From the IMG/VR virus record IMGVR_UViG_3300046787_000286, positions 150,007 to 214,006 of that record: a DNA stretch of 64,000 nt; one strand, given 5' to 3'. Shown here piece after piece: positions 33,508-64,000 of the stretch (positions are counted from its first letter, which is position 1; each line of letters begins with the position of its first letter). The translations under genes were made by a program, and so were the position numbers. The notes beneath the pieces were generated by a model. It saw only the letters and a list, made by a program, of their open reading frames with translations. It did no database searches and was not told the DNA's origin.

Positions 33508-33513
33508 TAAATA
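33508..33513 (+). promoter_or_regulatory. T4-type late promoter
   Basis: ATAAATA about 22 nt upstream of the fibre gene. Confidence 0.65.
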
Positions 33514-33535
33514 ACAAAAAAGGTAGAGTTCTCAC

Positions 33536-47003: not shown

Positions 47004-48572
47004 ATGATGCGCGACTTACTTAACATTCTTGACAAAATAACCCTTACTGAAGGTGTGGGATTAACTAACCGTAAACCTGGCGAAAAATTCAAAAATCATG
47101 TGGATGACATTGTGTCGTACCAGAACATGGAATTTTATCCAGACTCAGGCCGATACGAAACCCCAGACGAACTAGCACAGGCCAAAACCTCAGTTGAGCA
47201 GTCTGGTAGAAACATACACTGGATCAATCAACCTAACTCATCAACTGGTGGATTCATGATTGCCACGTTCACTGGCGAAGATGGAAAAGAATATTATCTA
47301 GGCAAATGGGTCAAAGCAATTAGTCCAAACAAGGCCCTGAACAATTTTGCGCACAATGAGATTCCCGGTGGATTCAAGTTCCAAAGCAAGGCAGGGCAAA
47401 AGGAAAACTCTGGACTCAAGCCCAGTGAGTGGTTAGAGCAATATCAAAACAACACTCCACAAACAATTTTAGATCAAGCCCGCAAGGCATTTGGACCAGA
47501 CAGCGCAGAAGCTCAAGCACTGGCAACATTTATTAACGGAGATATTCCAGTGGAAGTTGCCCGTGGTAACATGAACGCTACTGCCTTCCGCGATTACTTT
47601 GCTGAGGTACTACAGCCTATTGCACTAGTGCTAGGTAAAAAAGTATCCGGTAATGCCGCAGAAGCGGCTCAAATCTTCTTTGGTCCAGGTGCTGATTACT
47701 CAGATTGTACAATTAGTTTCAACAACAATACCATTGGTGGCCTGTACGATTCCTTGTTGGTTAACCCCGAAGGTAAACAGATCAAGCTGTCGAGCAAAGG
47801 TAAAGATGGCGCTAACGCATCAGTTACTAACTTGATTAAATCTGTACAAGAACTTGAAAAAGTACCTGCAGGTAAAAAGCTCAAGGCCACATTTGCCGAA
47901 GAAATAGAAATGTTGACCAACATTGAAAAACTGGGACACTTCGGTGCTCCTATTGCTATTGCCGAAAAGTACGGAATTATCGACCAAGGCGACGGAGCAA
48001 GAGTTATGCAGTTAAAAAATCTGGGTCCCAACGATGATGTTACTGGTATCTTGAGCAAGAAGCTACAGGCGTTGTACAATGACCGCAAAGCCAAGGACAT
48101 GGGACGCATTATCCCGGCTGAACACATGATTGCTGCCATTGCTTACAAAGTTGCCGATTATGTTAACAAGAACACACGCTTTGGCGAAGCAGCTTCTTCT
48201 ATCCTAAACAACGCGGCACTGGTACAAATGTATACAAACACTACCGACACTGCTGATACAATTACTATTACTAAACTAGAAGCAGTATACCCATCGCAGA
48301 CAGTTACAGGTGTGCTGCTAGATGCTACCAAGGCTTACATGAGCACACAAGGCAAAGGTAACTTTACATTTAAGATCTTGAAGAATGGTGCCAAGCCAAC
48401 TGATGTAAACGACATCGACGGAATGGATAGTTTAGAAGAGCCCGGGGTAGATACATCTAATCCAGACGAGTTAGACGCTGCTACACAACGTAGAAGTTCT
48501 GTAAAAGCAGCTGGAGCAGCACCTGAGAAATTAGGGTCTAAACAAAGTTTAGGTAGAGCACGTCAACGCTGA
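47004..48572 (+). CDS. 522-aa protein with PD-(D/E)xK-like nuclease motif; probable late/virion protein
   Basis: FAEV..P...LYDS...IKLSSK; TAAGTA upstream; leader ending LTE. Confidence 0.6.
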   Translation: MMRDLLNILDKITLTEGVGLTNRKPGEKFKNHVDDIVSYQNMEFYPDSGRYETPDELAQAKTSVEQSGRNIHWINQPNSSTGGFMIATFTGEDGKEYYLGKWVKAISPNKALNNFAHNEIPGGFKFQSKAGQKENSGLKPSEWLEQYQNNTPQTILDQARKAFGPDSAEAQALATFINGDIPVEVARGNMNATAFRDYFAEVLQPIALVLGKKVSGNAAEAAQIFFGPGADYSDCTISFNNNTIGGLYDSLLVNPEGKQIKLSSKGKDGANASVTNLIKSVQELEKVPAGKKLKATFAEEIEMLTNIEKLGHFGAPIAIAEKYGIIDQGDGARVMQLKNLGPNDDVTGILSKKLQALYNDRKAKDMGRIIPAEHMIAAIAYKVADYVNKNTRFGEAASSILNNAALVQMYTNTTDTADTITITKLEAVYPSQTVTGVLLDATKAYMSTQGKGNFTFKILKNGAKPTDVNDIDGMDSLEEPGVDTSNPDELDAATQRRSSVKAAGAAPEKLGSKQSLGRARQR

Positions 48573-49135
48573 GTTAGGTCTGAAATGTAATTGCAGATTC
48601 TCAATTGAACTGCTTCTTCTGCACTAAGGTAAACATCTTGTGGAGGAAGCAGTTTTTCTTTTATAGTTTTTTCGTCTAGTCCAGTTGCCAACTTGTAATG
48701 TGCTAGCATGCGTTCGTGAACTAAATTAAACTCTTTTGTAACTGCCCATAGTTCGTGGTGCTTGCCTTCGCTTCCCCAGGAGTACTGGTGGCTTAGTATA
48801 CTGGTATTTGGTGTTAATATGCGGGGCTTGCCTGCTAAGAATATCATCAATCCTGCTGATGCAATTTGCCCTAGTCCCACAGTTTTAACAGGAATCAAGC
48901 TGCTTCGTATTACATCGATTAGTGCAAATGCAGATTCGAGCTCCCCGCCTGAGCTGCAAATCATTAACAGTAATTCTTTTTTCTTCTTTTTAACCACATG
49001 ATTCTCTGCCAGAATCCACTCTATAATAGGCTGTATTGACTCTTCGTCAACTTCGCCCATGAAGACATACATCCCGTTGTCTTGCAGTTGTTCCGAATGT
49101 GATCTTGATTCTGGTAGGTCTTTTTCTTGTGGCAT
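48563..49135 (-). CDS. clpP: ClpP protease subunit
   Basis: ICSSGG, GQIASAG (Ser), SHQ (His), DVYLSAEEA (Asp). Confidence 0.92.
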   Translation of the reverse strand: MPQEKDLPESRSHSEQLQDNGMYVFMGEVDEESIQPIIEWILAENHVVKKKKKELLLMICSSGGELESAFALIDVIRSSLIPVKTVGLGQIASAGLMIFLAGKPRILTPNTSILSHQYSWGSEGKHHELWAVTKEFNLVHERMLAHYKLATGLDEKTIKEKLLPPQDVYLSAEEAVQLRICNYISDLTQR

Positions 49136-49170
49136 AATAAGTAACCGGTTACCCAATTACTTATCATGTA

Positions 49171-52567: not shown

Positions 52568-53743
52568 TTAGTGACGACTCACTAAATCTGCAACCTTTTT
52601 ACCTGTAGCCGGGCCTAGTGTCCATCCCAAATGTCCGTGTCCTGTGTTGTAAAACACATTTGGGGTAGATACACTTTGGCGAATAATTGGCATCATGTCT
52701 GGTGTCATTGGACGCAAACATGCATACTGAGTGTAATCATGTGTGTTAATGTTTGGGAAATTAGTATGCACCCATTTCAACAACGGGTCGATTCGATCTC
52801 TAGTGATGTCGTAGTTTTCACCTGCCAGCTCTGCTGTGCCTGCAACACGGAAACGATTGCCTAATGTTGCTGTAACAATTTTTGCTTCGTCATCTAATAA
52901 ACTCACTCGAGGCAAATACTTAGGATCGACATTGTTGATTGTGATAGAGTAACCCTTGACTGGGTATACATCAATTGTGTCTCCCGCTGTCTTGGCCAAT
53001 GCTCGACTGCCAACTCCGTTTGCAATCACAATAGCATCGTAAAAGGAAAGTTCTTCCACATGTCCAATTTTCCAGTTGTAGTGAAATTCAACTCCGTACT
53101 TGGTCTCTAAGATTTCTGCAAGGCTATAACAGAACTTGTGAATGTCTCCTGTCCAATCTTCCTTGGTCCATGTGCCACCGATAATATTCTCAATATCACC
53201 TAGTGCAGGATCCATTGACTTTACATGTTGACTGCTTTGTAGCAAATCCCAACTGCATCCGTTGGCATTATAAAGTTCTTTAATATCTTGTGCATTTTTC
53301 CAATAGTCGGGATTCTTGTAAAAATGCAAGATGCCGCAATCGTTACGATCAAAATCGATATTCTCATCGCTACAAATCTCATCGTATAGCTGTCTGCTTT
53401 GAATACCCATCTGAACAGTCGAACTAGAGTTGCGATAACAAACATCGTTGACTGTTGCTAACAAAAATTTAAACACCCAACGCCACATTGCCCAGTCTAG
53501 TCTCCAACGAAACTTTAACGGAGCGTCTTTCTTGAACATCCATTTGAAGCCTTTCTTGACATTGCTCCATGTTGTCCATGTTTCTGAATTACTAACTGAT
53601 ATTTGTCCACCGTTGGCAAAACTTGTTTTCATGCCAGCATAACGTTCAGCTTCGTATACTCTAACTTTGTGACCGGACTTTGCCAGATAATACGCTGAAC
53701 ATAGTCCCGTAATGCCTGCGCCTACTACTGCTACTTTTTTCAC
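52568..53743 (-). CDS. dadA: D-amino acid dehydrogenase (FAD-dependent)
   Basis: GAGITG, TSFANGGQIS, YPVKGYS, RVAGTAE, LRPMTPD, NTGHGHLGWT. Confidence 0.93.
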   Translation of the reverse strand: MKKVAVVGAGITGLCSAYYLAKSGHKVRVYEAERYAGMKTSFANGGQISVSNSETWTTWSNVKKGFKWMFKKDAPLKFRWRLDWAMWRWVFKFLLATVNDVCYRNSSSTVQMGIQSRQLYDEICSDENIDFDRNDCGILHFYKNPDYWKNAQDIKELYNANGCSWDLLQSSQHVKSMDPALGDIENIIGGTWTKEDWTGDIHKFCYSLAEILETKYGVEFHYNWKIGHVEELSFYDAIVIANGVGSRALAKTAGDTIDVYPVKGYSITINNVDPKYLPRVSLLDDEAKIVTATLGNRFRVAGTAELAGENYDITRDRIDPLLKWVHTNFPNINTHDYTQYACLRPMTPDMMPIIRQSVSTPNVFYNTGHGHLGWTLGPATGKKVADLVSRH

Positions 53744-53815: not shown

Positions 53816-54085
53816 ATGATACGATTTTTTAAAAACTTATTCAAAGGCAAGGAACCTATTCCTGCGCCCGAAGCACCTTACAAGGTAGAAACGCCAGTTA
53901 CTAAAGTTGCCGCAGTAAATGCACAACCTGTTGTTGCCGAGGTAGTAACTGCCAAGGCTGTTACCAAGGCACCTGCTAAGAAACGCACGTTTGTTAAACG
54001 TGAAGAAGGTGGCGTTGCCAAAGTAGCACCTGTCAAAGCAAAGCCCAAGGCACCTGCAAAACCCAAGGCACCTAAAGCAAAATAA
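53816..54085 (+). CDS. Lys/Ala/Pro-rich low-complexity protein
   Basis: TAAATA and GGAGG upstream; APYKVETP, KAPAKPK repeats. Confidence 0.7.
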   Translation: MIRFFKNLFKGKEPIPAPEAPYKVETPVTKVAAVNAQPVVAEVVTAKAVTKAPAKKRTFVKREEGGVAKVAPVKAKPKAPAKPKAPKAK

Positions 54086-54107
54086 AAAGCCCCGAAAGGG
54101 GCTTTTT
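54084..54107. terminator. bidirectional intrinsic terminator
   Basis: AAAAAGCCCC-GAAA-GGGGCTTTTT between convergent genes. Confidence 0.9.
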
Positions 54108-54409
54108 TATTGAAATATCATTCTGGCTAGTGCTACACTATCTATGCTGACTAACAAGAAGTAGTTGGCTAACATACCTAGACTCTTTCGTGTCCATGCC
54201 GCCCATGCAAAGATAACGCATTGTGTAATGAACAATGGGTATAGGATCAAGAAAGGCGGATTAGGAACAGTTAGCATCATAGTAAATGAGCATCCGATAC
54301 TCAAGAACCATGCCAAGATTTCTAATCCACAACGTAGAGGATTACTGCGCCAGTCCTCCCGTATCCATGCAACAATATTAAGCAGTAAATTGTTCATACA
54401 GTTGTTCAC
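54107..54409 (-). CDS. 3-TM membrane protein
   Basis: Hydrophobic segments, PPFL.LYP. Confidence 0.7.
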   Translation of the reverse strand: MNNCMNNLLLNIVAWIREDWRSNPLRCGLEILAWFLSIGCSFTMMLTVPNPPFLILYPLFITQCVIFAWAAWTRKSLGMLANYFLLVSIDSVALARMIFQ

Positions 54410-55400
54410 TTGCTAGATTCTTGCTCTTGGCCTCGCACTGAATATCAAAGTTGTCAGCAAAGCCTAACACCCAGTCATTACAAGCTGTATTCCACATCAT
54501 ATCAGAGTGTGCGCGGAGCTTTTGCTTTTTAAAACCTCCAGCAAGAAGTTGATCAAGGTCTGGTCGAACTCCTGTATCATGACCAACCAAAACATCTTCG
54601 CGGCTAACAGAGTAGTGAAGAGTAGGACGCTGGTCGCGCCAAGACTCAATAACCCGCATCGTGCGAGCGTCCTTGGGATCGATGTACTCGCCGGAATTAA
54701 TCCAATGGTGGTGAACGTCCAGAACAAGAGCAACATGCTCAGCCACAAGTAAAGTACTATCAAGTCCATTTGTCATCTCGTCGTTTTCGATGGAAATTAA
54801 GTTCCTGGCCTCTGGAGTGAGACGACCTAGTGTCTTCAGGAATTTAGTGGCACCACCTTTGCCACTCAAATGCACGTTTATTTTAAATCCATGATCATGC
54901 CAACTTGAACCGTAACCCATCCAGCGAGCCATGTCCGCGTGATACTCAAATTCGAGTATCGAACGTTCCACGATGTCGTCGGACTCACTAGCCAGTACAC
55001 AGAATTGCCCAGGGTGAAACGACAATCGAACACCAAGTTCTCGAGCACGAGCACCAATCGGAGCAAAGATTCGGGCACAGTGATCTTGAACATCTTGCTG
55101 TTGCCAAAACGGAATCCAATCTTCATGTGTGTATCCTTGTAGCATTTCTGAGCCCAGGCGCACCATGCGGCGGCCTTCGGGCATGGCACCCACACGTTCC
55201 ACCATAAGCAGAGCCGCACGAGCATTGTGATTCATAATGTCCCACTGACGCTGTTCTGCTTCGCTCTTGTGTTCGCGAAGCCAGCGCATTGTAGTAGAAC
55301 GCCCGTTTAGTTCACGGCTCTCAACTGTGGGCTTGCGACCCGCAGTTTCAGAGGGATGATCGAGCCATTTGCAGCAAAAGCCAATTCGAGGTGTATTCAT
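54378..55400 (-). CDS. uvsE: UV-damage endonuclease (predicted leaderless)
   Basis: RIGFCC, RLSFHPGQF, INVH, IENDE, LDVHHH, HYS, HSD, EAKSK; TTGACA-17-TATAAT at 55407-55435. Confidence 0.93.
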   Translation of the reverse strand: MNTPRIGFCCKWLDHPSETAGRKPTVESRELNGRSTTMRWLREHKSEAEQRQWDIMNHNARAALLMVERVGAMPEGRRMVRLGSEMLQGYTHEDWIPFWQQQDVQDHCARIFAPIGARARELGVRLSFHPGQFCVLASESDDIVERSILEFEYHADMARWMGYGSSWHDHGFKINVHLSGKGGATKFLKTLGRLTPEARNLISIENDEMTNGLDSTLLVAEHVALVLDVHHHWINSGEYIDPKDARTMRVIESWRDQRPTLHYSVSREDVLVGHDTGVRPDLDQLLAGGFKKQKLRAHSDMMWNTACNDWVLGFADNFDIQCEAKSKNLASEQLYEQFTA

Positions 55401-55417
55401 GATGTAATTATACAACA

Positions 55418-55972
55418 TTACGAAAATTGTGTCAACACGTTATCTAACTTGTCAAACAACAAATTTGGTAAATCTTTGAACATTTTTTCAATTTGATCTG
55501 GGTGGTCCAAAATAACCCATTGGATTGTAGGGTTATCTTTTACAAGATGTAATACATATTGCTTATAATTGTGCCACTTATGGATAGCCAATTTATCTGT
55601 GCCAAGATCCTTGGGCTGCAAATCAAACCCAACTAACAATACAATATCGCTATTAGAAGTTGACAAGTGCATACTCACAATATCATCTGGATGGTCTACT
55701 ATTTCGTGAAAGTCACCTTGATATAACTTAACACCCGGTGGCCTACCAATTGACTGATATGCAGAATTAGGCACATACAAATTGCATCTTGTATGGAAAC
55801 TTCTATTAACTAAATCCTGTGCCTCTGGCTCGGAGTGACATATGACATTGTCAGTTGCGTAACTGCGCCAGGTGCGCCAGCCACCCCAAAATGGACCAAC
55901 GCTTTTGAGTCGTTCTATATCTATAGTTGGATGTATAGTTGCAGCATCGGCTAGTACCCAGGATATTTTCAT
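55418..55972 (-). CDS. Maf/DUF115-like or sialyltransferase-fold protein (degenerate)
   Basis: G..WG.....S..TDNVIC ... IVLLVGFDL pattern. Confidence 0.45.
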   Translation of the reverse strand: MKISWVLADAATIHPTIDIERLKSVGPFWGGWRTWRSYATDNVICHSEPEAQDLVNRSFHTRCNLYVPNSAYQSIGRPPGVKLYQGDFHEIVDHPDDIVSMHLSTSNSDIVLLVGFDLQPKDLGTDKLAIHKWHNYKQYVLHLVKDNPTIQWVILDHPDQIEKMFKDLPNLLFDKLDNVLTQFS

Positions 55973-57231
55973 TCAACTGCCTTGATTAATTTCCATTTAA
56001 ACCCGCCCAAGCATTGCCACGCAAACACCGGGTTCTCAACAGTAGGGTTAGCATTAAAAACAATATCACCTTTGGTTCCAGAATAGTTCGGAACTTCGGT
56101 TCCGTGACTGACTTTATGAATTCCCACTTGCAATTGCTTGATTGATGTAAGGCCAACATCACTAATTTCAATAGCAGGGGTTTTGTTAACGCCGATCGAC
56201 AATGCTTGTTTTCTAGTTGTGCCAATGAATCCAGTTTGGTTTTTAAATTTACCAGCAGAAATAGTAACTTCTTCATCCCATATACTCAGTGCCATGTCCG
56301 GATCAGCAGTATTGATACCAACACGTCTTTTTGTAACACTCATTGTTTCAGCTAAGTTAGTTTCGCCTGTTACTGTTAATTTTGATAGCACACCAACTGA
56401 CTGTAAATTACTTTCCGTGATAGTACGTGCTAATTTACCCGAATCAACCAGCAGCTCTCCGCTGATTTTAACTTTATCAAAATCAATTCCTTGATCTGTA
56501 ATAGCTTCTTTAACTTGCTTTACTAATGATTCTTTCCACTTAGCATCAAGTTTTTCAAATGTTTTTGTACCAACATTGTTTGCTAGCTCTTGCCAGGCGT
56601 AGTTGTCTGTATTGATAGACCCTTTGACTACCAGGTCCTTGACAGTCAATGAGTTTACAGCCGAAATATCTTTTGCTGTGAAATTGTTTTCAACTACAAC
56701 ATGAGCATCAAGCACTGTTAGCTCAACTGATTCTGAGTTAGACTGTATTCCTTTAAAGACTGAGGTGTTTAGATTTTTTACAGTCTCTTCTATGCTTTGT
56801 TTGATGATAGGACGAATATCAGTGCTTGACAAACTTGCCAACACACGTTGAGTGGCATGTTGATTGACCACTGTTTCAATTTTTTCAAGCCACACAGGAT
56901 CTAATGTTAGTTCTGAAATAGCTTGCTTAATCAAATCCTGTGTACTGTCATTAATGCTACGAGTAATAAATCCGTAATCAATATATTGGGCCAATCCAGG
57001 AATCTTGCCACTGTGAAACAAGTCCTTTACTGAGGACTTAACTGCATCAATGAGCTCTGGCATTGCTTCGCTGTTAGCAAACTTTGCAACAACTCGATCT
57101 TGAATAAACTTAATAGCATCTGCTTCTACAGTCTTGAGCCATTCTTCAGACATTGTTTGCTGGATTTTATCAGCAACTTCTTTTTTAACTTGTTGTTCAA
57201 CTAATTGTTGTAATGCATTGGAATCAAGCAT
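55969..57231 (-). CDS. helical N-terminus plus fibre-like beta C-terminus, probable virion-associated protein
   Basis: SNLQSVGVL, RVGINT.DP, KGDIVFN..P....W.CLGG..W. Confidence 0.6.
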   Translation of the reverse strand: MLDSNALQQLVEQQVKKEVADKIQQTMSEEWLKTVEADAIKFIQDRVVAKFANSEAMPELIDAVKSSVKDLFHSGKIPGLAQYIDYGFITRSINDSTQDLIKQAISELTLDPVWLEKIETVVNQHATQRVLASLSSTDIRPIIKQSIEETVKNLNTSVFKGIQSNSESVELTVLDAHVVVENNFTAKDISAVNSLTVKDLVVKGSINTDNYAWQELANNVGTKTFEKLDAKWKESLVKQVKEAITDQGIDFDKVKISGELLVDSGKLARTITESNLQSVGVLSKLTVTGETNLAETMSVTKRRVGINTADPDMALSIWDEEVTISAGKFKNQTGFIGTTRKQALSIGVNKTPAIEISDVGLTSIKQLQVGIHKVSHGTEVPNYSGTKGDIVFNANPTVENPVFAWQCLGGFKWKLIKAVE

Positions 57232-58144
57232 GTTCTCTCCATAAATCTAACGTAACACAATGAAATCCGCCGCCCAGTGTACGACTGTGACGTAGTGTTA
57301 GAGGAATAACCGTGAATCCCCGTTTCTCCAAACTAGCGTGAAGCCCTGTTTGTTGAGCGTCACATATAACAGTTTGGGGGTCCACAACGAGCATATTAAG
57401 GGCGATCCATTTACTAGCATACGGGTACTGGTAAAAATCTTGAGGTTCAACGTCATCCACATAAATCTTCTCCCAATCCTGGAAAACTCTTGGACAATTT
57501 TCTTCTGTAACTCGGCTTCCATTTAATAATACCAACCCTTCTCTCAAAGGAACAATTGTGCTGTCAATATGCACACCTGCATAGAAGTTGCACAGCTCAA
57601 TTTTAACATCAGGCAATATATTACACAACCAATCGTATGCAGCCCGATTACCCGACGACGACTCCAAGAATAGCATTTTGTCTTTGCCTAGTCGACACAC
57701 ATTAGCAGCATCTAACACAAAGCCTTCGTTACGTGGCATAAAATGATACTGGGTTGCTGCATCAACAATATCGTGGTAACATTGCAATTCCATGTCACGA
57801 CAAGGATACATCATGGCAGGATTTACAATAGTATCTCCATGTACAAGCAATCGGTCACGAGGGCAATAATTGTACAGGCCATCATGCACCTGAAAGTTTA
57901 AAGGATCTGGACGAACTACATCTACCCCAAGACTGACCAATGTACTACATAACTTTTGTAGGTCCTGTTCAGTTTCGTCAATAATCCACTGAGGTACCGG
58001 ACCGCTCGGTAACGGAGTTTCTTTCCATAACGTGTTTTGTTCTTCTGCTCTAAATATTTTGTCATGTACTGGCCAATTTGCATGCTCGGCTGTTCCTACA
58101 ACAACCTTTTTAAGTGGATCCCACTCGTTATAACTTGATATCAT
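57224..58144 (-). CDS. amidinotransferase (glycine / inosamine-phosphate amidinotransferase family)
   Basis: NEWDPLKKVVVG, CPRD, DAAN, HIDST, GGGFHCVTLD (catalytic Asp/His/Cys). Confidence 0.92.
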   Translation of the reverse strand: MISSYNEWDPLKKVVVGTAEHANWPVHDKIFRAEEQNTLWKETPLPSGPVPQWIIDETEQDLQKLCSTLVSLGVDVVRPDPLNFQVHDGLYNYCPRDRLLVHGDTIVNPAMMYPCRDMELQCYHDIVDAATQYHFMPRNEGFVLDAANVCRLGKDKMLFLESSSGNRAAYDWLCNILPDVKIELCNFYAGVHIDSTIVPLREGLVLLNGSRVTEENCPRVFQDWEKIYVDDVEPQDFYQYPYASKWIALNMLVVDPQTVICDAQQTGLHASLEKRGFTVIPLTLRHSRTLGGGFHCVTLDLWREHA

Positions 58145-58659
58145 ATATGCCCTGTAATCTGAAGAGTATATCTATCTTCTATCCCAATGTTTGCAGCCAT
58201 ATGTGGCTCATCATATACCCATTCAACGGTATCTCCTGCACGCCAACATGTGTATGGTTTTCCTGCCACTTCGAGATAGTGTCCGGATTTCCAATCTTCC
58301 AACAACACTAACGAACGTCTAATAGTTGTTTCTTTGCCTTGTAAATTAAACAGCTCAATATACCGCTTGTATAGGTCTCTATGAACTGGCATCACTGTGC
58401 CAGTTGGCATACGATAAAACGCAAGCCCGACATCTTGCCAGCCTTGCTGTTCGTATATGTTAATAAACGTCTTTGCCCAGGCAGGTAATCGATGGCGCAT
58501 ATCGCACAGGTCACCAGTAATTTTATTTTGGTAACCTTGCGAGATCCAGAGTTCAACACTGCTTGGATCATTGAACGGTTCCTGGATGTAATCTAATGTT
58601 TTAAACTCATCATCCCAAAACCGTTCTATACGATATTTAAGCGGCACGTGTATTGCCAT
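58141..58659 (-). CDS. 2OG-Fe(II) oxygenase (Asp/Asn hydroxylase-like)
   Basis: MPVHRD (HxD), PHMAAN, RYTLQITG. Confidence 0.8.
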   Translation of the reverse strand: MAIHVPLKYRIERFWDDEFKTLDYIQEPFNDPSSVELWISQGYQNKITGDLCDMRHRLPAWAKTFINIYEQQGWQDVGLAFYRMPTGTVMPVHRDLYKRYIELFNLQGKETTIRRSLVLLEDWKSGHYLEVAGKPYTCWRAGDTVEWVYDEPHMAANIGIEDRYTLQITGHI

Positions 58660-59878
58660 AGTGGACAACTTCGATCTTGTCTGTTGATTTGAGTTTGCGC
58701 CATGGGTCAACAATCATTGACCCATCTGGGATAGCACAATACGGCTGTGTCTTGTCTTGGTCGCCTGTGTATTCGTAAGTAATTTGGCGGTCATGTGCCC
58801 ACAAGATGATGCTTGCTTGTTCAATGCTGTCAACTACTTTATCCTTGTTATCAGCTAGTGGATCAATATAAACAACTGACTTGCCTTCTTGCTCAATATA
58901 ATGACCTACCAATGTTGAGTAACTACCGATACAGTACTCAACATCTGGCTTGTATGCTTTGCCATGGATCACAATCGGCATGTTATCGTGCATCACACTC
59001 AAGTCCAGCAAGAACATTGCAAGGTTCTTTGCTTGGATTTCACGAGCATGCATAACTGTGTCGAACAAGTCGTAACCAATGTTGTATTCCTGTGCTAGCC
59101 AACGTAGAGCAATATTGTCTCGTGGGTGGCAAGCACCTGCATCGCCCATGCCAGCAGTCATGTACTTGGGTCCCATGATACGCATAGTGCTTCGTGCCAA
59201 GGCATTTGTAACAACATCAACATCGATATTACCAATACGCAAAGCAAAGTCTTGAATCATGTTCACTAAGCCAACTTTAGCACTGATGAATGTGTTGTAA
59301 AAGATTTTAATTGCTTCGCATTCGTCCCAGGTGCCAATTTCGTAGCGAGGATTGTTCTGCATAACAGTATCATACAATGCACGAAGCTCACCTGCTAATG
59401 CATTAGGATTTCCGTCCTCGGTACCAATCATAATCATCTCAGGATTAACCATGTCCCACTTAACTGATCCCATAGCAATCAAATAAGGGTTGTACAAGAA
59501 TTGATGTTTCTTGTCCAGCAACGGGTAAAAGTGTTTGCGAGTTGTGCCTGGTAATACTGTAGAGATTAGTACAACTTTTTTAGAGTCTTTGGCATATTTG
59601 TTAATGTTGTTAATAGCATCGAGCACAGCATCTCGGCCAAAATCTCGTGGTTCCATGTGCGAGCTAGGGACTGATCCGTCATATCCTTCTGCATGCGGAG
59701 TTGGCACAGCGATAAAAATCCATTCGCTTTCGTTCACAAGCTCTTCAATCTCACAAACTTTTACCGAGTCGCTTGTGCGTGGGTAAATATCGTAGCCCCA
59801 AACTTCGTGCTTTTCTGCCATAACTTCAGCGCAATCGAGGCCAAGTTTTCCAATTCCAATAAAACCAATTTTTGACAT
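58637..59878 (-). CDS. ugd: UDP-glucose/GDP-mannose dehydrogenase family
   Basis: GIGKLG, IAVPTP, STVLPGT, K..YN.F, GACHPRD, YKP. Confidence 0.88.
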   Translation of the reverse strand: MSKIGFIGIGKLGLDCAEVMAEKHEVWGYDIYPRTSDSVKVCEIEELVNESEWIFIAVPTPHAEGYDGSVPSSHMEPRDFGRDAVLDAINNINKYAKDSKKVVLISTVLPGTTRKHFYPLLDKKHQFLYNPYLIAMGSVKWDMVNPEMIMIGTEDGNPNALAGELRALYDTVMQNNPRYEIGTWDECEAIKIFYNTFISAKVGLVNMIQDFALRIGNIDVDVVTNALARSTMRIMGPKYMTAGMGDAGACHPRDNIALRWLAQEYNIGYDLFDTVMHAREIQAKNLAMFLLDLSVMHDNMPIVIHGKAYKPDVEYCIGSYSTLVGHYIEQEGKSVVYIDPLADNKDKVVDSIEQASIILWAHDRQITYEYTGDQDKTQPYCAIPDGSMIVDPWRKLKSTDKIEVVHYGNTRAA

Positions 59879-59881
59879 ATT

Positions 59882-61171
59882 ATGAGTATTCCTTTAGATC
59901 GTCTGTATCACCACATAGAAAATTTAAGCGGTGATAATATATTAATTTATCGCTGGGTGCCACATGGCTCAAAAAAAATCAGCGATCTGCAACCGTTGTA
60001 TCCAATTGACCGTGTTGCCCAATGGGACAAATTTATAACTTCGTTGCCAATAATCTGTCACGACCAAGAACCGTTAACACATGATTCGCACACCAGTGAC
60101 GAACTTTTAAAAATCATTATGATACAGGAACCGTTCCATAATGTAGCAGAAGATGCAGCATTGTTTATCAGAGACATAAAGCAAAAGATGCACATATATC
60201 GAGTTTACGCTTCGTCATTGTCAGTGTACGATCGATTGCTGTTGTGTCATTCAGAAAAAAACAGTGTAGAACTTGCAAAATTTGAAGCTAATGGATTTAT
60301 AGGGGTTTATTACTGGTCACATGCTCTGATTGCAAGGGACTGGTTTAGATTTGCCGAGCACGATAACTCTATTGCAAACCCTGCATTTAAATTTGCAAAT
60401 GACTTTTTGATTTACAATCGTGCTTGGCAAGGCACAAGAGAGTATAGATTAAAATTTACAGAATTATTATTAAAAAATAGTTTAATACCTAACAGCAATA
60501 TAAAATTTAACCCGCACGACAACGACATGCATTACACTCAGCACACATTTACAAATCAAAGTTTTGCTGTGACCAATGAACGGATGGAAAGATTAATTCA
60601 AATAAACGATTCGTCAAGTTCATGTAGTGCTGATTATGTAAGCACTGATTACCACGATGCCGGGTTAGAAGTTGTGCTAGAAACATTGTTTGACGATAGT
60701 CGGTTGCACTTAACTGAAAAATCTCTAAGGCCTATCGCCTGCGGGAAACCATTTATATTAGCTGCTACTCCAAACAGTCTTCAGTATCTCAGAGACTACG
60801 GATTTAAAACATTTGATGGGTTAATTGACGAATCGTATGATACTATTCAAGACCCGCTAGCTAGACTAGTTGCAATTGTTACAGAACTCAAACGTATTGC
60901 TAGCATGCCCTTTGCCGAAAAACAAAAACTTTGGGAAGACCTACATTCAATAGCTGACTATAACAAAAAGTTGTTTTTCTCAAAAGAGTGGGAATCTACA
61001 ATTTCCGACGAACTCAAAGCTAACTTAGCCGCAGCCCGCGCAGCAGCGGATCAATATTGTGCCGGAACATACTGGAGAAAAATACACACAGAATTTAAAA
61101 ACGAACGAGGTACTTCTCAAGGCAAACGATTTTTAGACAACTGGCTTAGTCAACGTGGGTACGGGTATTAA
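59882..61171 (+). CDS. glycosyltransferase-like protein (TEK..RPI family)
   Basis: HDQEPL, YNR..R.YR, VVLET...LTEKSLRPI..KPF...GFKTF..IDESYD. Confidence 0.6.
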   Translation: MSIPLDRLYHHIENLSGDNILIYRWVPHGSKKISDLQPLYPIDRVAQWDKFITSLPIICHDQEPLTHDSHTSDELLKIIMIQEPFHNVAEDAALFIRDIKQKMHIYRVYASSLSVYDRLLLCHSEKNSVELAKFEANGFIGVYYWSHALIARDWFRFAEHDNSIANPAFKFANDFLIYNRAWQGTREYRLKFTELLLKNSLIPNSNIKFNPHDNDMHYTQHTFTNQSFAVTNERMERLIQINDSSSSCSADYVSTDYHDAGLEVVLETLFDDSRLHLTEKSLRPIACGKPFILAATPNSLQYLRDYGFKTFDGLIDESYDTIQDPLARLVAIVTELKRIASMPFAEKQKLWEDLHSIADYNKKLFFSKEWESTISDELKANLAAARAAADQYCAGTYWRKIHTEFKNERGTSQGKRFLDNWLSQRGYGY

Positions 61172-61550: not shown

Positions 61551-62339
61551 ATGGAATTTACTTTTGATTTAATTTCTGACTTACATGTCGAAACCTGGGA
61601 CAAATTTGACTGGACCAATCAGGCCACCAGTCCTTACTGTGTTGTTGCAGGTGATGTAAGTACAGATAGAAAACGGTTAACAGAGACCCTAAAACATTTG
61701 GGTAGCTGTTACCAGGGTGTGTTTTACATCGACGGCAATGATGAGCACAGAAATAATTTAGAGAACCTAGGGCAAAGTTACAAAGACCTAAGTCACTATG
61801 TTGATAAGTTTAAAAATGTAGTGTTTATGCAAGACAATGTGGTAGTAATCAATGGTGTTGCATTCTTGGCTGCAAATGGGTGGTATAGTTTCGACCTTGA
61901 CCCTAGTGTTGATTACATAAAGAGCACCGAGTGGTTTACCGAACGCTACGGGGTAAATTCAACTGTTGCTCCTGTTGTTTCGAACTTAGCAATTACTGAT
62001 GCAGCGTACTTAAAAAACAGTGTTCGTAAACTACAAATGCATCGAGATGTCAAAGCTATTGTCATGGTCACACATACTGTACCAGATTACCGGTTAGTGT
62101 CACATGATCTAGAGTTAGAAAATCACTACAGAATGAACACTACTGGAAATCCTCACTTGCAGATTGCATTAGACGAAGATTCTGAAAATAAAATCAAGGC
62201 TTGGTGTTTTGGACATTATCATAGATCAATTGATCGTACTATTGACGGCATCCGTTATGTAAACAACTGCAAAGGAAGGGGTAATACACCCTGGAGTCAG
62301 GCAGCATATTACCCCAAACGAATTACAATAAATTTTTAA
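61551..62339 (+). CDS. calcineurin-like metallophosphoesterase
   Basis: ISDLH, AGD, DGNDEH, THTVP, FGHYH. Confidence 0.88.
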   Translation: MEFTFDLISDLHVETWDKFDWTNQATSPYCVVAGDVSTDRKRLTETLKHLGSCYQGVFYIDGNDEHRNNLENLGQSYKDLSHYVDKFKNVVFMQDNVVVINGVAFLAANGWYSFDLDPSVDYIKSTEWFTERYGVNSTVAPVVSNLAITDAAYLKNSVRKLQMHRDVKAIVMVTHTVPDYRLVSHDLELENHYRMNTTGNPHLQIALDEDSENKIKAWCFGHYHRSIDRTIDGIRYVNNCKGRGNTPWSQAAYYPKRITINF

Positions 62340-62644
62340 ATAGTGTCAGGTCTGATTTCGATTTGCAAAGGATAATTTTGTTTCCTTGCGCTATGCAAAA
62401 CTTCGTGACCTTTTTGTTCTGCAATTTCAAATGGCAATACTGCTACAGTAGCTTGCCCGCCTGTGTGAATGTCTTCGGTAATCTTGAGTGCTGTCTCAGT
62501 ACTGTAATCAAAAAATTCAATCAAACTTTCAATTACAAATTCCATAGTAGTTTGGTTGTCGTTTAAGTAAATGACCTTGAACATCGAAGGTTCCTTGATC
62601 GACTCGTTGATTTTAATTTTTGTTGCGGCGTCAGCTTGCGACAT
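62336..62644 (-). CDS. clpS: ClpS N-degron adaptor
   Basis: FKVIYLNDNQTTMEFVI..L...IHTGG...EIAEQK...YPL. Confidence 0.93.
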   Translation of the reverse strand: MSQADAATKIKINESIKEPSMFKVIYLNDNQTTMEFVIESLIEFFDYSTETALKITEDIHTGGQATVAVLPFEIAEQKGHEVLHSARKQNYPLQIEIRPDTI

Positions 62645-62713: not shown

Positions 62714-63157
62714 TCACTTTTGATAAGTGATTGCAATAGATTTTGGCTTCTTCTCTTCAGGAACAATGCGTTCCAGTTTGATTGACAAGATACCATTGGT
62801 CATTTCTGCATTAGTAACTTCTACATATTCAGCTAGTGTGAATGTGCGTTCGAAATCACGCATGCTAATACCGTGGACTAGGTATTCGCCTTCAGAATCG
62901 CGAGTAGTGCCGCCTTGGATAGCAAGGACATTCTTCTCCAAACGGATATCGATTTCACCTTCTGCAAATCCAGCCACTGCCAAGTCAATCACAAAATGAT
63001 CTTCATCAATTTTGCGAACGTTGTGTGGGGGATAATTAGTTTGTTGCTGTGAAGTCACACGCATGAGTTCGTCAAGCATGTTGTCAAAGCCGATACCAAA
63101 CTTGTGAAGTTGTGGAATATCGAAACTGCGAAGAGTGAGGGTTTTGTTTTGTGTCAT
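62714..63157 (-). CDS. ibpA: small heat-shock protein (Hsp20/IbpA)
   Basis: IGFD, YPPHN, LAVAGF, GIS.RDF.RTFTL, NGILSI, PEEKKPKSIAI. Confidence 0.93.
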   Translation of the reverse strand: MTQNKTLTLRSFDIPQLHKFGIGFDNMLDELMRVTSQQQTNYPPHNVRKIDEDHFVIDLAVAGFAEGEIDIRLEKNVLAIQGGTTRDSEGEYLVHGISMRDFERTFTLAEYVEVTNAEMTNGILSIKLERIVPEEKKPKSIAITYQK

Positions 63158-63218
63158 GTTATTCTCCTTATAGCAAGATATGACTAGTATGTGGGCCCAA
63201 CCATTGGCACCCACATAC
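63153..63218 (-). ncRNA. ROSE-like RNA thermometer in the hsp20 5' UTR
   Basis: Hairpin 63187-63218, then UCUUGCU-AUA-AGGAGA, with GUCAU/AUGAC pairing over the start codon. Confidence 0.65.
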
Positions 63219-63242
63219 ATATTTATGACCTCAAAGGGTCAT

Positions 63243-64000
63243 TTACATGCCCATTCCCATGTGTGGCATGCCTGGTGCAGTGTCACCTTTCGACGGAATC
63301 TCTGCAATAGAGCAATCCGTAGTAAGGATCAAGCCTGCAATCGATGCAGCATTAACTAATGCTGTTTTTGTTACTTTGGTTGGGTCAATAACACCTGCGT
63401 CAACCATGTCACCGTAAGTGTGGTTGCCTGCGTTATAACCATAGTTGCCAGTGTTAGCTGCAATTTGATTAATTACAACATCAGCAGAGTCGCCGGCATT
63501 GCTGGCAATGCAGCGAGCTGGTGCATCCAATGCACGTAGCAAAATATTCCACCCTGCAAATTGGTCGTCGTTGGCTGGACGGTTAGGTGCAGCTTGGAGA
63601 GCTTGGCGAACACGAATTAGTGCAACACCACCGCCTGCAACAATGCCTTCTTCTACAGCAGCGCGAGTTGCATGGAGAGCATCGTCGATGCGATCTTTCT
63701 TCTCTTTCATTTCTACTTCTGTAGCGGCACCAACTTTGATAACTGCAACACCGCCTGCTAGTTTAGCCAAGCGTTCTTGTAGTTTTTCACGGTCGTAATC
63801 ATTGGTAGCTTGATCACACTGTGAGCGAATTGCCTTAACACGAGCTTCAATAGCTGCTGACTCGCCTGCGCCGTTGATGATGATAGTGTTTTCTTTATCA
63901 ATCTCTACTCGAGCTGCCATGCCAAGATGTTCAACTGTTGCTTTTTCAAGTGTTAATCCAACTTCGTCGGCAATAACAGTAGCACCTGTCAAGATAGCAA
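63243..64000 (-). CDS. groEL: chaperonin GroEL, C-terminal part (5' end outside window)
   Basis: [52 protein letters not shown] tail. Confidence 0.97.

What the first reader, a model, noticed from the sequence alone, without database searches (positions are those of the whole stretch)
55418..61171. Biosynthetic-looking cluster: NDP-sugar dehydrogenase, 2OG oxygenase, amidinotransferase, fibre-like protein, Maf-like and GT-like transferases
Seen: five overlapping minus-strand genes plus a divergent GT-like gene. The amidinotransferase retains its catalytic motifs (DAAN, HIDST, GGGFHC). Established: this family transfers an amidino group from Arg to amines (glycine, aminocyclitols), and Maf-type proteins attach acidic sugars to flagellin. 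Inference: the cluster makes a guanidinylated or oxidised sugar for decorating a virion protein (55969-57231 is embedded in it), the host surface or DNA. I do not know such a pathway as characterised in phages.
Basis: partly seen in the sequence, partly recalled or inferred. Interest (0 to 1): 0.72.

Follow-up and report, generated by a model that had tools for sequence, protein, structure and literature searches.

The report
Phage guanidino-sugar biosynthesis and transfer module
A family of large freshwater phages carries a tightly conserved gene set (sugar dehydrogenase, small iron oxygenase, arginine amidinotransferase, glycosyltransferase) that most likely builds and attaches a positively charged, guanidine-bearing sugar, a chemistry not yet described for any virus.

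Summary
The genes are real, at the stated coordinates and under strong purifying selection. The amidinotransferase is a genuine StrB1/AGAT-family enzyme with all its catalytic motifs.

The "cluster" is really two things. The first is a core module: a UGDH-like dehydrogenase, a 172-aa HxD..H..R cupin, the amidinotransferase, and a divergent gene that models as a GT-B glycosyltransferase. The three minus-strand genes are present in 80/80 related jumbo-phage contigs and the transferase in 76/80. The second is a variable insert, the fibre-like 420-aa protein and a 184-aa Maf-fold protein, found in only 19/80 and 17/80.

The core genes are linked beyond synteny:
- The cupin is fused to p429-type transferases in at least 8 protein clusters.
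- The cupin is fused once to a short DegT-like PLP enzyme.
- That PLP enzyme neighbours the amidinotransferase in unrelated contigs and is core in this clade.

The best reading is a streptidine-like sequence (dehydrogenase, transaminase, amidinotransferase) acting on a nucleotide sugar, followed by transfer.

The acceptor is unresolved. Known DNA-modification entry enzymes and lipid-linked export genes are absent, so virion protein is the leading guess. No product has been shown.

The parts
58637..59878 (-). UGDH-like NAD-dependent nucleotide-sugar dehydrogenase (413 aa), first gene of the minus-strand operon
   Evidence: Pfam UDPG_MGDP_dh_N and central domain at 5e-15 each. PHROG 9148 at 2.5e-89. 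Matches PDB UDP-glucose 6-dehydrogenases at E about 6e-15, with the catalytic Cys aligned: GDAGACHPRD against GFGGSCFQKD. Below the NCBIfam NDP-sugDHase cut-off, 139.9 against 189.8 bits. Invariant YNPYLIA, K191, N195, C250 and D254 across phage relatives, including cyanophage Bellamy and pelagiphage HTVC008M. Present in 80/80 loci. dN/dS 0.02-0.03.
58141..58659 (-). Small cupin, Fe(II)/2-oxoglutarate-oxygenase-like (172 aa; true start at the ATG at 58659)
   Evidence: Invariant H93-x-D95 ... H153 ... R163 in 21 homologues. Pfam Asp_Arg_Hydrox is weak: 13/21 members, best 2.7e-5. Weak alignment to the TauD-family enzyme AtsK around the distal His. Present in 80/80 loci. Fused to p429-type transferases in at least 8 clusters, and to a short DegT-like protein in one cluster.
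57224..58144 (-). L-arginine amidinotransferase of the StrB1/AGAT family (306 aa)
   Evidence: Profile search against PDB: StrB1 1bwd 5e-87 over the full length, HsvA 5.6e-51, AGAT 3.6e-49, SxtG 2.1e-47. Invariant D97, D145, H192, D194 and C296. Present in 80/80 loci at 67-80% identity.
59882..61171 (+). Divergently transcribed GT-B-fold glycosyltransferase (p429, 429 aa)
   Evidence: AF2 model with pLDDT 82.5 and pTM 0.83. VIA Z 11.7 to T4 beta-glucosyltransferase, 10.4 POGLUT1, 9.9 T4 alpha-glucosyltransferase, 9.6 alpha1,3-fucosyltransferase. All Foldseek hits are GT-B enzymes. No Pfam, PHROG, PDB-sequence or GT10-HMM hit. Present in 76/80 loci. Five paralogues in the same genome.
55969..57231 (-). 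Accessory 420-aa protein (p420), possibly fibre-like; variable insert, not part of the core
   Evidence: Present in 19/80 related loci. No Pfam or PHROG hit. The language-model neighbours carry PTL_trimer and Peptidase_S74 tail-fibre families, which is a lead only (score 0.90, 118 shared features). dN/dS 0.06.
55418..55972 (-). Accessory 184-aa Maf/MptE-fold protein (p184), a putative sialyltransferase-like transferase; variable insert
   Evidence: AF2 model with pLDDT 88.3. VIA Z 10.6 to Maf glycosyltransferase 5mu5 (168 of 184 residues aligned), 8.5 Cst-I, 8.2 MptE. Foldseek Cst-I TM 0.56. Embedding lead to MptE-like/WaaZ. PF01973 HMM gives no hit. Present in 17/80 loci, together with p420 in only 7.
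55407..55435 (-). Perfect sigma-70 consensus (TTGACA-17-TATAAT) at the p184/UvdE junction; probable separate start of the downstream unit
   Evidence: 12/12 match. A strong terminator-like hairpin lies at 54107-54084 on the minus strand. These are consensus matches only.
54378..55418 (-). UvdE-like endonuclease: a conserved neighbour, judged not part of the pathway
   Evidence: Pfam UvdE 1.3e-28 and PHROG 8420 at 1.3e-67. Homologues occur in Erwinia, Dickeya, Aeromonas and Vibrio jumbo phages; none of these phage groups appears among the amidinotransferase hits. Follows the module in 71/80 loci.

Best explanation
**What it is.** The window is the last 64 kb of a 214-kb fragment of a freshwater jumbo phage. 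Complete relatives are 320-374 kb.

The core of the finding is a four-gene module: a UGDH-like NAD-dependent dehydrogenase, a small Fe/2OG-type cupin, a StrB1-type L-arginine amidinotransferase, and a head-to-head GT-B glycosyltransferase. Two variable genes, p420 and p184, are inserted after the module in a minority of relatives.

**Proposed mechanism.** These steps are inferred, not shown.
1. A UDP-hexose is oxidised by the dehydrogenase and/or the cupin. The phage's own GalE can interconvert the UDP-hexose pool.
2. The resulting carbonyl is transaminated by a short DegT-like PLP enzyme. That enzyme is encoded elsewhere in the genome but is core to the clade.
3. The new amine receives an amidino group from L-arginine through the Cys296/His192/Asp triad of the amidinotransferase. 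This gives a guanidino sugar.
4. The GT-B enzyme, one of six paralogues, transfers the sugar, or a precursor that is then tailored in place, to an acceptor.

This is the chemical logic of streptidine biosynthesis (dehydrogenase, then DegT-family aminotransferase, then StrB1), moved onto a glycan pathway.

**Acceptor.** It is unresolved. A cytoplasmic macromolecule is favoured, most likely a virion protein.

**Shown.** Gene reality, family and fold assignments, conservation, linkage and fusions.

**Inferred.** Substrate, order of steps, product and acceptor.
For: - **The amidinotransferase is genuine.** Full-length match to StrB1 at 5e-87, with invariant catalytic residues.
- **The operon is conserved.** Dehydrogenase, cupin and amidinotransferase are present in 80/80 related viral loci and the divergent transferase in 76/80. 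dN/dS is 0.02-0.14.
- **Fusions tie the cupin to its partners.** It is fused to p429-type GT-B domains in at least 8 clusters at 50% identity, including one GT-cupin-GT protein of 1018 aa. It is fused to the short DegT-like protein in P0360.
- **Partial modules recur outside the clade.**
  - L109: UGDH, cupin, short DegT, GTP cyclohydrolase I, amidinotransferase, all contiguous.
  - L110: radical SAM, p429-like, amidinotransferase, UGDH, short SDR, short DegT, GT2, GT2.
  - L107: short DegT, p429-like, amidinotransferase.
  - L105 and L106: cupin and amidinotransferase, with a p429-like gene nearby.
  - Cyanophage S-SCSM2R: short DegT, radical SAM, GT, cupin, amidinotransferase, GT2.
  - Sources.
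- **The short DegT-like protein looks functional and is core.** It keeps the PLP-lysine motif. It is present at 69-86% identity in 5/5 complete relatives. It sits next to a bona fide GalE.
- **p429 models as a GT-B transferase**.
- **Cupin and amidinotransferase move as a pair.** In L009 the flanking genes are 95-97% identical to the window but these two are only 76-78%.
- **Against lipid-linked export.** No phage-encoded phosphoglycosyl transferase or Wzx flippase in six genomes.
- **Against the known DNA routes.** No TET/JBP, C5 methyltransferase, QueC or DpdA in the genomes searched (four to five of them complete). ThyA is lacking in two complete genomes.
Against: - No product, substrate or acceptor has been observed. 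Everything chemical is inference from families and linkage.
- The cupin reaches no curated family threshold and its fold was not modelled. It could be a sugar keto-isomerase-type cupin rather than an oxygenase.
- The dehydrogenase is divergent and falls below the NCBIfam cut-off. From my memory of human UGDH numbering, it has Tyr where classical enzymes have the thioester-hydrolysis Glu. Whether it makes an acid or an aldehyde is therefore unknown.
- The short DegT-like protein is only about 200 aa against roughly 360 for the family, and may not be a working transaminase.
- In this genome the transaminase and GalE lie about 110 kb from the module.
- The best structural neighbours of p429 are the two T4 DNA glucosyltransferases. 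This keeps DNA in play as an acceptor.
- HsvA, the second-best amidinotransferase match, acts on polyamines, not sugars.
Confidence: 0.5

Rival explanations
1. DNA hypermodification. The module makes a cationic sugar that p429-type transferases attach to phage DNA bases, as T-even phages glucosylate 5-hydroxymethylcytosine, to evade host nucleases.
For: - The best structural match of p429 is T4 beta-glucosyltransferase (Z 11.7). T4 alpha-glucosyltransferase is fourth (Z 9.9).
- The module is core to the clade, which fits an essential anti-restriction trait.
- It sits beside a DNA-repair-type UvdE gene.
- Phage DNA glycans built by several transferases are documented (PMC13326640; bioRxiv 10.1101/2023.12.21.572611).
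Against: - The known entry points are missing. There is no TET/JBP, no C5 DNA methyltransferase and no QueC or DpdA in the genomes searched.
- The only ThyA homologue looks canonical: top hits are thymidylate synthases and the active-site Asn is kept. It is absent from two complete genomes that still carry the module.
- p429 and its five paralogues are acidic, pI 5.1-6.8. This is weak evidence.
- The fold match is to the general GT-B architecture. POGLUT1 and fucosyltransferase lie within 2 Z units.
Confidence: 0.13
2. Host-envelope remodelling. The enzymes alter LPS, capsule or S-layer glycans of the infected cell, for superinfection exclusion or to avoid trapping of released virions, as is usually assumed for sugar genes in marine phages.
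For: - Relatives of the dehydrogenase and amidinotransferase sit in glycosyltransferase-rich islands of cyanophages S-SCSM2R and Bellamy and of pelagiphage HTVC008M.
- L110 ends in two GT2 genes.
Against: - No initiating phosphoglycosyl transferase and no Wzx flippase in six genomes. Host machinery would be required.
- The module is core and highly conserved in a clade of probably lytic jumbo phages, unlike typical variable host-range islands.
- None of the module proteins matched a membrane-protein or signal-peptide family. Membrane segments were not tested directly.
Confidence: 0.12
3. Small-molecule product. The module makes a free guanidino compound. This could be an aminoglycoside-like guanidino-glycoside or guanidino-cyclitol, or an amidinated polyamine of the HsvA type. 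It would be used to condense DNA, poison host translation or inhibit competitors.
For: - The closest solved relative is StrB1 of streptomycin biosynthesis and the second is the polyamine amidinotransferase HsvA.
- The dehydrogenase, DegT and amidinotransferase set mirrors streptidine logic. This comparison rests on established knowledge, not on a test here.
- The genome holds a very large tailoring repertoire: at least 8 radical-SAM genes, a carbamoyltransferase, a methyltransferase, a NadE-like enzyme and a TPP enzyme.
Against: - Cupin-transferase fusions and six paralogous GT-B enzymes fit glycan assembly on a macromolecule better than a small molecule.
- No exporter or self-resistance gene was seen near the module.
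- A polyamine role would not explain the linkage to a UGDH-like enzyme and GalE.
Confidence: 0.12
4. No common pathway. These are independently acting auxiliary metabolic genes (arginine or creatine-type metabolism, UDP-glucuronate supply) that happen to be neighbours.
For: - Public annotations treat such genes singly, for example "glycine amidinotransferase" or "antibiotic synthesis genes".
- The dehydrogenase occurs without the amidinotransferase in Bellamy and HTVC008M.
Against: - 80/80 synteny with overlapping reading frames.
- Fusion proteins.
- The same partners recur in contigs of different composition (GC 28-55%) and different gene order.
Confidence: 0.05

Closest known systems
StrB1, L-arginine:inosamine-phosphate amidinotransferase of streptomycin (streptidine) biosynthesis, with its dehydrogenase and StsC aminotransferase partners
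   Same: - Full-length sequence relationship at 5e-87.
- Same catalytic Cys/His/Asp and arginine-binding motifs.
- Same set of partner enzyme classes: an NAD dehydrogenase, a DegT-family PLP enzyme and an amidinotransferase.
   Different: - The phage enzyme is shorter, 306 aa against 348 aa, lacking two insertions seen in the alignment.
- The partners are a UGDH-family enzyme and a truncated DegT-like protein, not inositol enzymes.
- No kinase or inositol gene was seen in the genes examined.
- It is coupled to GT-B transferases and a cupin, and it is encoded by a virus.
T4 beta- and alpha-glucosyltransferases (DNA 5-hmC glucosylation)
   Same: These are the best and fourth-best structural neighbours of p429 (Z 11.7 and 9.9). 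Both are phage-encoded GT-B enzymes.
   Different: - No detectable sequence similarity.
- The hydroxymethylase, dCTPase-type and TET entry enzymes are absent or not universal in the clade.
- p429 is acidic.
- p429 carries an invariant T-E-K motif. From memory this resembles GT10-type enzymes, but the GT10 HMM does not match.
Sugar-gene islands of T4-like marine phages (Synechococcus phages S-SCSM2R and Bellamy, Pelagibacter phage HTVC008M)
   Same: - S-SCSM2R has the adjacent cupin and amidinotransferase pair (31% and 36% identity) plus the short DegT-like gene.
- Bellamy and HTVC008M have the same UGDH subfamily (54% and 47% identity) next to NadE-like, methyltransferase and carbamoyltransferase genes. 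All of these also exist in this genome.
   Different: - In those phages the genes lie in variable, GT2- and GT25-rich islands.
- No function has been tested. The S-SCSM2R paper calls them antibiotic-synthesis genes (PMC12801897).
- Here the genes form a compact operon that is core to a jumbo-phage clade and is paired with a different transferase family.
Maf flagellin glycosyltransferases / GT42 sialyltransferases (for p184 only)
   Same: Fold match to the catalytic domain of Maf from Magnetospirillum (Z 10.6) and to Cst-I (Z 8.5, TM 0.56).
   Different: - p184 is only 184 aa, a bare catalytic domain.
- The PF01973 HMM gives no hit.
- No NeuB-type nonulosonic acid synthase was found in the 214 kb available.
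- It is a variable accessory gene (17/80 loci).

Membership tests
Amidinotransferase family (AGAT / StrB1 / SxtG / HsvA; pentein superfamily) | Full-length homology to characterised amidinotransferases | tested here: met
   Profile of 13 homologues against PDB: StrB1 5e-87 (profile positions 2-303 of 304), HsvA 5.6e-51, AGAT 3.6e-49, SxtG 2.1e-47. DDAH reaches only 0.009.
Amidinotransferase family (AGAT / StrB1 / SxtG / HsvA; pentein superfamily) | Catalytic Cys nucleophile with His and Asp partners, and the Asp residues that hold the arginine guanidinium | tested here: met
   C296 (GGGFHC), H192 and D194 (HIDST), D145 (DAAN) and D97 (CPRD) are invariant. They align with the same motifs of StrB1. 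The roles of these residues are taken from established knowledge of AGAT and StrB1.
Amidinotransferase family (AGAT / StrB1 / SxtG / HsvA; pentein superfamily) | Arginine-dependent amidino transfer to an amine acceptor | not testable with these tools
   Needs an enzyme assay.
UDP-glucose/GDP-mannose dehydrogenase family | NAD-binding N-terminal domain plus the central dimerisation domain | tested here: met
   PF03721 at 56.0 bits (cut-off 27) and PF00984 at 55.8 bits (cut-off 25.4).
UDP-glucose/GDP-mannose dehydrogenase family | Catalytic cysteine in the GGxCxxKD-type motif | tested here: met
   C250 in GDAGACHPRD aligns with the Cys of GFGGSCFQKD in human UGDH. It is invariant in 11 relatives.
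UDP-glucose/GDP-mannose dehydrogenase family | C-terminal UDP-binding domain and the curated subfamily score | tested here: inconclusive
   - PF03720 was not reported for the window protein. It scores 25.9-28.6 bits, below the cut-off of 30, in the L109 and L110 orthologues.
- TIGR03026 scores 139.9 bits against a cut-off of 189.8.
- The PDB alignment does run through the C-terminal domain.
Fe(II)/2-oxoglutarate-dependent oxygenases | HxD/E...H metal triad, and an Arg about 10 residues after the distal His for the 2OG carboxylate | tested here: met
   H93, D95, H153 and R163 are invariant in 21 sequences.
Fe(II)/2-oxoglutarate-dependent oxygenases | Significant match to a curated 2OG-oxygenase family, or a double-stranded beta-helix fold | tested here: inconclusive
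   - PF05118 scores 14.6 bits for the window protein, against a cut-off of 22.6. It is seen in 13/21 homologues, best 2.7e-5.
- The PDB profile hit to AtsK is only E 0.57.
GT-B glycosyltransferases | Two facing Rossmann-like domains | tested here: met
   AF2 model with pLDDT 82.5. The 50 best VIA matches listed are almost all GT-B enzymes (two are receptor fusion constructs); the top Z is 11.7. Foldseek probabilities reach 1.00, and all hits are GT-B enzymes.
GT-B glycosyltransferases | Membership of a defined sequence family (e.g. GT10 fucosyltransferases) | tested here: not met
   PF00852 gives no match even at E<=10 on the genome. No Pfam or PHROG hit for any of 21 orthologues. The embedding lead to GT10 scores only 0.79.
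Maf / MptE-like (PF01973) transferases (p184) | Maf catalytic-domain fold | tested here: met
   Z 10.6 to 5mu5 with 168 residues aligned. Related folds follow: Cst-I, MptE and mammalian sialyltransferases.
Maf / MptE-like (PF01973) transferases (p184) | Sequence-family match, and a CMP-nonulosonic acid supply | tested here: not met
   PF01973 gives no hit at E<=1. NeuB gives no hit in the 214-kb fragment. The genome is only 62% complete, so absence of the pathway is not proven.
Phage tail fibre proteins (p420) | Recognisable fibre or trimerisation domains, or homology to structural proteins | tested here: inconclusive
   No Pfam, PHROG or NCBIfam hit. No paralogue in the genome. Only embedding and low-TM structural leads to PTL_trimer and Peptidase_S74 proteins; the held model has pLDDT 0.56.
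T-even-type DNA glycosylation systems | An enzyme that creates the hydroxyl handle on a base (ThyA-like hydroxymethylase or hydroxylase, or TET/JBP with a C5 methyltransferase) | tested here: not met
   No TET/JBP and no C5 methyltransferase in 6 genomes. There is at most a single, canonical-looking ThyA, and none in two complete genomes.

The most novel reading that the evidence does not exclude
A widespread clade of freshwater jumbo phages uses streptidine-type chemistry to make guanidino sugars. With a private family of GT-B transferases and radical-SAM tailoring enzymes, it builds a cationic glycan on virions or DNA, or releases an aminoglycoside-like guanidino-glycoside. This would be a class of viral glycan or metabolite with no described precedent.
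Probability: 0.3. Interest if true: 0.85.

Novelty: new variant of a known kind. Interest (0 to 1): 0.63.

Why it matters
**What would be new**
- Phage-encoded sugar pathways are known for DNA glucosylation and arabinosylation, for virion glycosylation in mycobacteriophages, and for serotype conversion.
- None is known to use an amidinotransferase. I know of no guanidino sugar described in any viral glycan. A full-text search for "guanidino sugar" found none.

**Scale and conservation**
- The amidinotransferase has thousands of close relatives in metagenomes.
- It is core to phages with 320-374-kb genomes. Whatever it makes is therefore abundant in freshwater and probably essential to these viruses.

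**Possible consequences of a permanently cationic sugar**
- It could change virion surface charge, DNA packaging or nuclease resistance.
- It would be a new handle for defence and counter-defence studies.

**Practical outputs of this analysis**
- It defines a new, unannotated GT-B family (p429-like) and a small cupin family that is repeatedly fused to it.
- It points to a cultured system, Synechococcus phage S-SCSM2R, in which the cupin and amidinotransferase pair can be tested.

Tried and rejected
**Searches that found nothing**
- Megablast of the region against 50,697 phage records: no match.
- tblastn of p429 against phages: no match.
- Sequence-profile searches of PDB for p429 and p184: nothing usable.
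- Pfam on all 21 p429 orthologues: only noise.
- GT10 HMM on the genome: no hit. GT10 membership is therefore not claimed, despite the embedding lead and a motif I recalled from memory.
- PF01973 HMM: no hit.
- NeuB: no hit.

**Ideas tested and dropped**
- *7-deazaguanine DNA modification.* A GTP cyclohydrolase I gene sits beside the short DegT-like gene, and an amidinotransferase could in principle act on preQ1. This was rejected: no QueC above cut-off and no TGT/DpdA in five genomes.
- *The 5mC to 5hmC route.* Rejected: no TET/JBP and no C5 methyltransferase.
- *A ThyA-type hydroxylase route.* The single ThyA looks canonical, and it is absent in two complete genomes.
- *UvdE-like gene as a sugar isomerase of the pathway.* Rejected. 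It matches UvdE and UvsE models specifically. It occurs widely in other jumbo phages, none of which appears among the amidinotransferase hits. It has its own consensus promoter.
- *The 250-aa protein that occupies the variable slot in a sister subclade.* It is not related to p184.

**Uninformative or unavailable**
- Bacterial amidinotransferase homologues at 35-40% identity have heterogeneous neighbourhoods, which say nothing about the acceptor.
- No RNA run holding the region was listed (the search was of kind 'any', not an RNA search), so expression timing could not be checked.

It was rebuilt without that row.

Full report
**Setting**

The window is bases 150007-214006 of a 214,006-bp linear IMG/VR contig, which CheckV rates 62% complete. 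Close relatives are complete genomes of 320-374 kb, one of them with terminal repeats. The runs that hold the sequence are freshwater, wetland and groundwater metagenomes. This is therefore an uncultured freshwater jumbo phage.

No cultured phage shares nucleotide similarity with the region.

**The observation**

The six ORFs are at the stated coordinates.
- On the minus strand, successive genes overlap by 4, 8 and 4 nt.
- The plus-strand gene starts 3 nt from the start of the dehydrogenase gene, so there is no intergenic space between the divergent genes.

Comparison with 60-odd homologues moves the start of the oxygenase gene to the ATG at 58659, giving 172 aa. Upstream of that point the frame carries stop codons in many relatives.

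All six genes are under strong purifying selection, with dN/dS of 0.02-0.14 and saturated synonymous sites. They are real genes.

**What each gene is**

*Amidinotransferase (306 aa).*
- It fails Pfam as a single sequence (ADI, E 0.07).
- A profile of 13 homologues matches StrB1, the inosamine-phosphate amidinotransferase of streptomycin biosynthesis, at 5e-87 over its whole length.
- The next matches are HsvA, AGAT and SxtG, at 1e-47 to 1e-51.
- It is a true member of the family.

*Dehydrogenase (413 aa).*
- It has the NAD-binding and central domains of the UDP-glucose/GDP-mannose dehydrogenase family.
- The catalytic cysteine aligns with that of human UGDH.
- It is nonetheless divergent. It falls below the NCBIfam subfamily cut-off.
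- It belongs to a phage-borne subfamily with its own invariant YNPYLIA motif, shared with cyanophage Bellamy (54% identity) and pelagiphage HTVC008M (47%).
- From memory of human UGDH, the Tyr in that motif replaces the glutamate that hydrolyses the thioester. I could not verify this with the tools.

*Cupin (172 aa).*
- H93-x-D95, H153 and R163 are invariant. This is the classical spacing of an Fe(II)/2OG oxygenase.
- Family hits are only weak.

*Divergent p429 (429 aa).*
- It has no sequence-family match of any kind.
- It folds confidently (pLDDT 82.5) into a GT-B glycosyltransferase.
- The VIA matches are, in order: T4 beta-glucosyltransferase (Z 11.7), POGLUT1 (10.4), POGLUT2 (10.3), T4 alpha-glucosyltransferase (9.9) and, at rank 6, alpha1,3-fucosyltransferase (9.6). 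The remaining listed rows are almost all GT-B enzymes too. Foldseek agrees.

*p184 (184 aa).*
- It folds with pLDDT 88.3.
- Its best match is the catalytic domain of a Maf glycosyltransferase (Z 10.6), followed by SteA (Z 9.1), the sialyltransferase Cst-I and MptE.
The PF01973 HMM does not match.

*p420 (420 aa).* There is nothing firmer than language-model and low-TM structural leads to phage tail trimerisation proteins.

**The cluster is a core module plus a variable insert**

I examined 80 related viral loci.

| Gene | Loci with the gene |
|---|---|
| Dehydrogenase, cupin, amidinotransferase (same order) | 80/80 |
| p429, divergent | 76/80 |
| UvdE-like gene after the module | 71/80 |
| p420 | 19/80 |
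| p184 | 17/80 |
| p420 and p184 together | 7/80 |

- In the commonest class of loci (21 of the 60 that could be measured), the UvdE-like gene follows the amidinotransferase within about 100 nt or less.
- Elsewhere the slot between them holds 0.2-3.7 kb of varying genes.
- A perfect sigma-70 consensus lies at the p184/UvdE junction, and a strong hairpin follows the next small gene. This suggests that UvdE belongs to a separate transcription unit.
- UvdE-like genes are common in unrelated jumbo phages; none of those phages appears among the amidinotransferase hits.

The fibre-like protein is therefore not a conserved member of the pathway. The idea that it is the pathway's target has no support from distribution.

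**Linkage beyond synteny**

A profile search with the cupin over 1.8 billion representative proteins found 957 clusters. Among the best 150:
- At least eight are fusions of the cupin to a p429-type GT-B domain. They are 522-595 aa long, and one 1018-aa protein has the order GT-cupin-GT.
- One is a fusion of a short DegT-like PLP protein to the cupin.

The same short DegT-like protein is about 200 aa and retains the SFxxxK..GxGG PLP-lysine motif. It lies next to or near the amidinotransferase in contigs of quite different composition:
- L107: DegT-like, p429-like, amidinotransferase.
- L110: radical SAM, p429-like, amidinotransferase, UGDH-like, short SDR, DegT-like, GT2, GT2.
- L113 and L120.
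- Cyanophage S-SCSM2R.

In L109 all of the following are contiguous: UGDH-like, cupin, DegT-like, GTP cyclohydrolase I, amidinotransferase. L109 is filed under a Legionellales MAG, but its genes match this phage's genes at 47-72% identity.

In the present genome, the DegT-like gene (94992-95585) and the cyclohydrolase gene (94289-94990) sit beside a bona fide GalE (95582-96532), about 110 kb from the module. The DegT-like gene is present at 69-86% identity in five of five complete relatives.

There is also a mosaic pattern. In L009 the flanking genes are 95-99% identical to the window, but the cupin and amidinotransferase are only 76-78% identical. The two therefore recombine as a unit.

**Most likely mechanism**

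The enzyme classes, taken together, reproduce the logic of streptidine formation: an alcohol is oxidised, the carbonyl is transaminated by a DegT-family enzyme, and StrB1 converts the amine to a guanidine using arginine. This comparison rests on established knowledge of that pathway.

Here the starting material is most plausibly a UDP-hexose, given the UGDH family and GalE. The end point is glycosyl transfer by p429.

Three things cannot be told from sequence:
- Whether the dehydrogenase gives a uronic acid or stops at the aldehyde.
- Whether the cupin hydroxylates, oxidises or isomerises.
- Whether tailoring happens on the nucleotide sugar or after transfer. The cupin-transferase fusions hint at the latter.

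I put 0.5 on [quoted passage not shown].

**The acceptor**

*DNA.*
- The T4 enzymes are the nearest structures to p429.
- However, the clade lacks TET/JBP, C5 methyltransferase, QueC and DpdA.
- Its only ThyA homologue looks canonical and is missing from two complete genomes that keep the module.
- Recent work shows that DNA glycosylation in phages starts from a ThyA-homologue product (PMC13326640).
- p429 and its paralogues are acidic.

*Host envelope.* No phosphoglycosyl transferase or Wzx flippase is encoded.

*Virion.*
- The genome is rich in tailoring genes: five paralogues of p429, at least eight radical-SAM genes including SPASM types, a carbamoyltransferase, two full-length DegT genes, SDRs, a 4,6-dehydratase, a TPP enzyme, a methyltransferase and a NadE-like enzyme.
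- Several of these lie directly downstream of a 4775-aa ORF and a protein with a Peptidase_G2/IMC domain.
- That arrangement resembles the glycan machinery that giant viruses use on their fibres. This is suggestive, not demonstrative.
- In S-SCSM2R, a second amidinotransferase and a 2OG oxygenase were reported in the virion proteome (PMC12801897).

Virion protein is my leading guess. DNA, host envelope and a free guanidino-glycoside or polyamine stand at roughly 0.12-0.13 each.

**Comparison with the known, and novelty**

- Amidinotransferase genes have been annotated in Campylobacter CP220-type phages (24% identity) and in S-SCSM2R (36%). None has been characterised.
- Phage sugar pathways and virion or DNA glycosylation are established kinds.
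- I found no description of an amidinotransferase-coupled version with a private GT-B family and fused cupins.
- I therefore rate this a new variant of a known kind. It is of substantial interest because it is core, abundant and chemically distinctive.
- The rating is limited by the complete lack of product data and by the absence of a cultured host for this clade.

Noticed in passing
genome G000 21878-32279 (outside the window) and window 43823-45094 (-): An unusual concentration of radical-SAM genes. Seven lie in a row at 21.9-32.3 kb, two of them with SPASM domains. One more lies in the window, next to two p429 paralogues (45069-46028 and 46009-46986). The row follows a 4775-aa ORF (1239-15566) and a Peptidase_G2/IMC-domain protein.
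   Followed up: partly
genome G000 133575-134561 (-), outside the window: A second, divergent pentein/amidinotransferase paralogue: 328 aa, 25% identity, with the Cys retained in GGMHC. It sits in a different, non-sugar context. S-SCSM2R also has two copies, and one of them is reported in its virion proteome.
   Followed up: partly
genome G000 81814-97723 (outside the window): A second sugar island. It holds a NadE-like amidotransferase, a radical-SAM-like gene, a short SDR, a TPP enzyme, a DegT aminotransferase, a 4,6-dehydratase, a methyltransferase, GTP cyclohydrolase I, the short DegT-like gene and GalE. The NadE-like enzyme, the methyltransferase and a carbamoyltransferase (33404-34885) are homologues of genes that flank the UGDH-like gene in Bellamy and HTVC008M.
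   Followed up: partly
window 55407-55435 (-) and 54084-54107 (-): A perfect TTGACA-17-TATAAT consensus overlaps the annotated UvdE start at 55418. The real start may therefore be the Met at 55400. A 10-bp GC-rich hairpin with a T-run follows the 100-aa membrane-like ORF.
   Followed up: no
window 48563-49156, 62336-62644, 62714-63220, 63243-63992: Phage-encoded proteostasis genes: a ClpP-like protease, the ClpS adaptor, Hsp20 and a GroEL-type chaperonin that is cut by the contig end. ClpS and Hsp20 are conserved next to the module in about 57-59 of 80 loci.
   Followed up: no
window 52568-53743 (-): An FAD-dependent oxidoreductase (DAO family, 1.6e-62) lies just downstream of the region. It has no counterpart in any of the 80 related loci, so it is probably a recent acquisition.
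   Followed up: no
L009 against window 57224-61171: Mosaic pattern. The UGDH-like gene, p429 and the downstream genes are 95-99% identical to the window, while the cupin and amidinotransferase between them are 76-78%. This indicates recombinational exchange of that gene pair.
   Followed up: partly
L087-L091 and L109 (genome contigs): Contigs that carry this phage module with full phage synteny are filed in MAGs of Haliscomenobacter, Terrimicrobiaceae, Legionella, Bacteroidetes and Legionellales. This is probably mis-binning, or possibly a clue to the host.
   Followed up: no
L008, L012, L059, L060, L070, L072, L074, L077, between the amidinotransferase and the p420-like gene: A sister subclade carries a conserved protein of about 250 aa with a Rossmann-like look in the variable slot. 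It is unrelated to p184 at the HMM level.
   Followed up: partly
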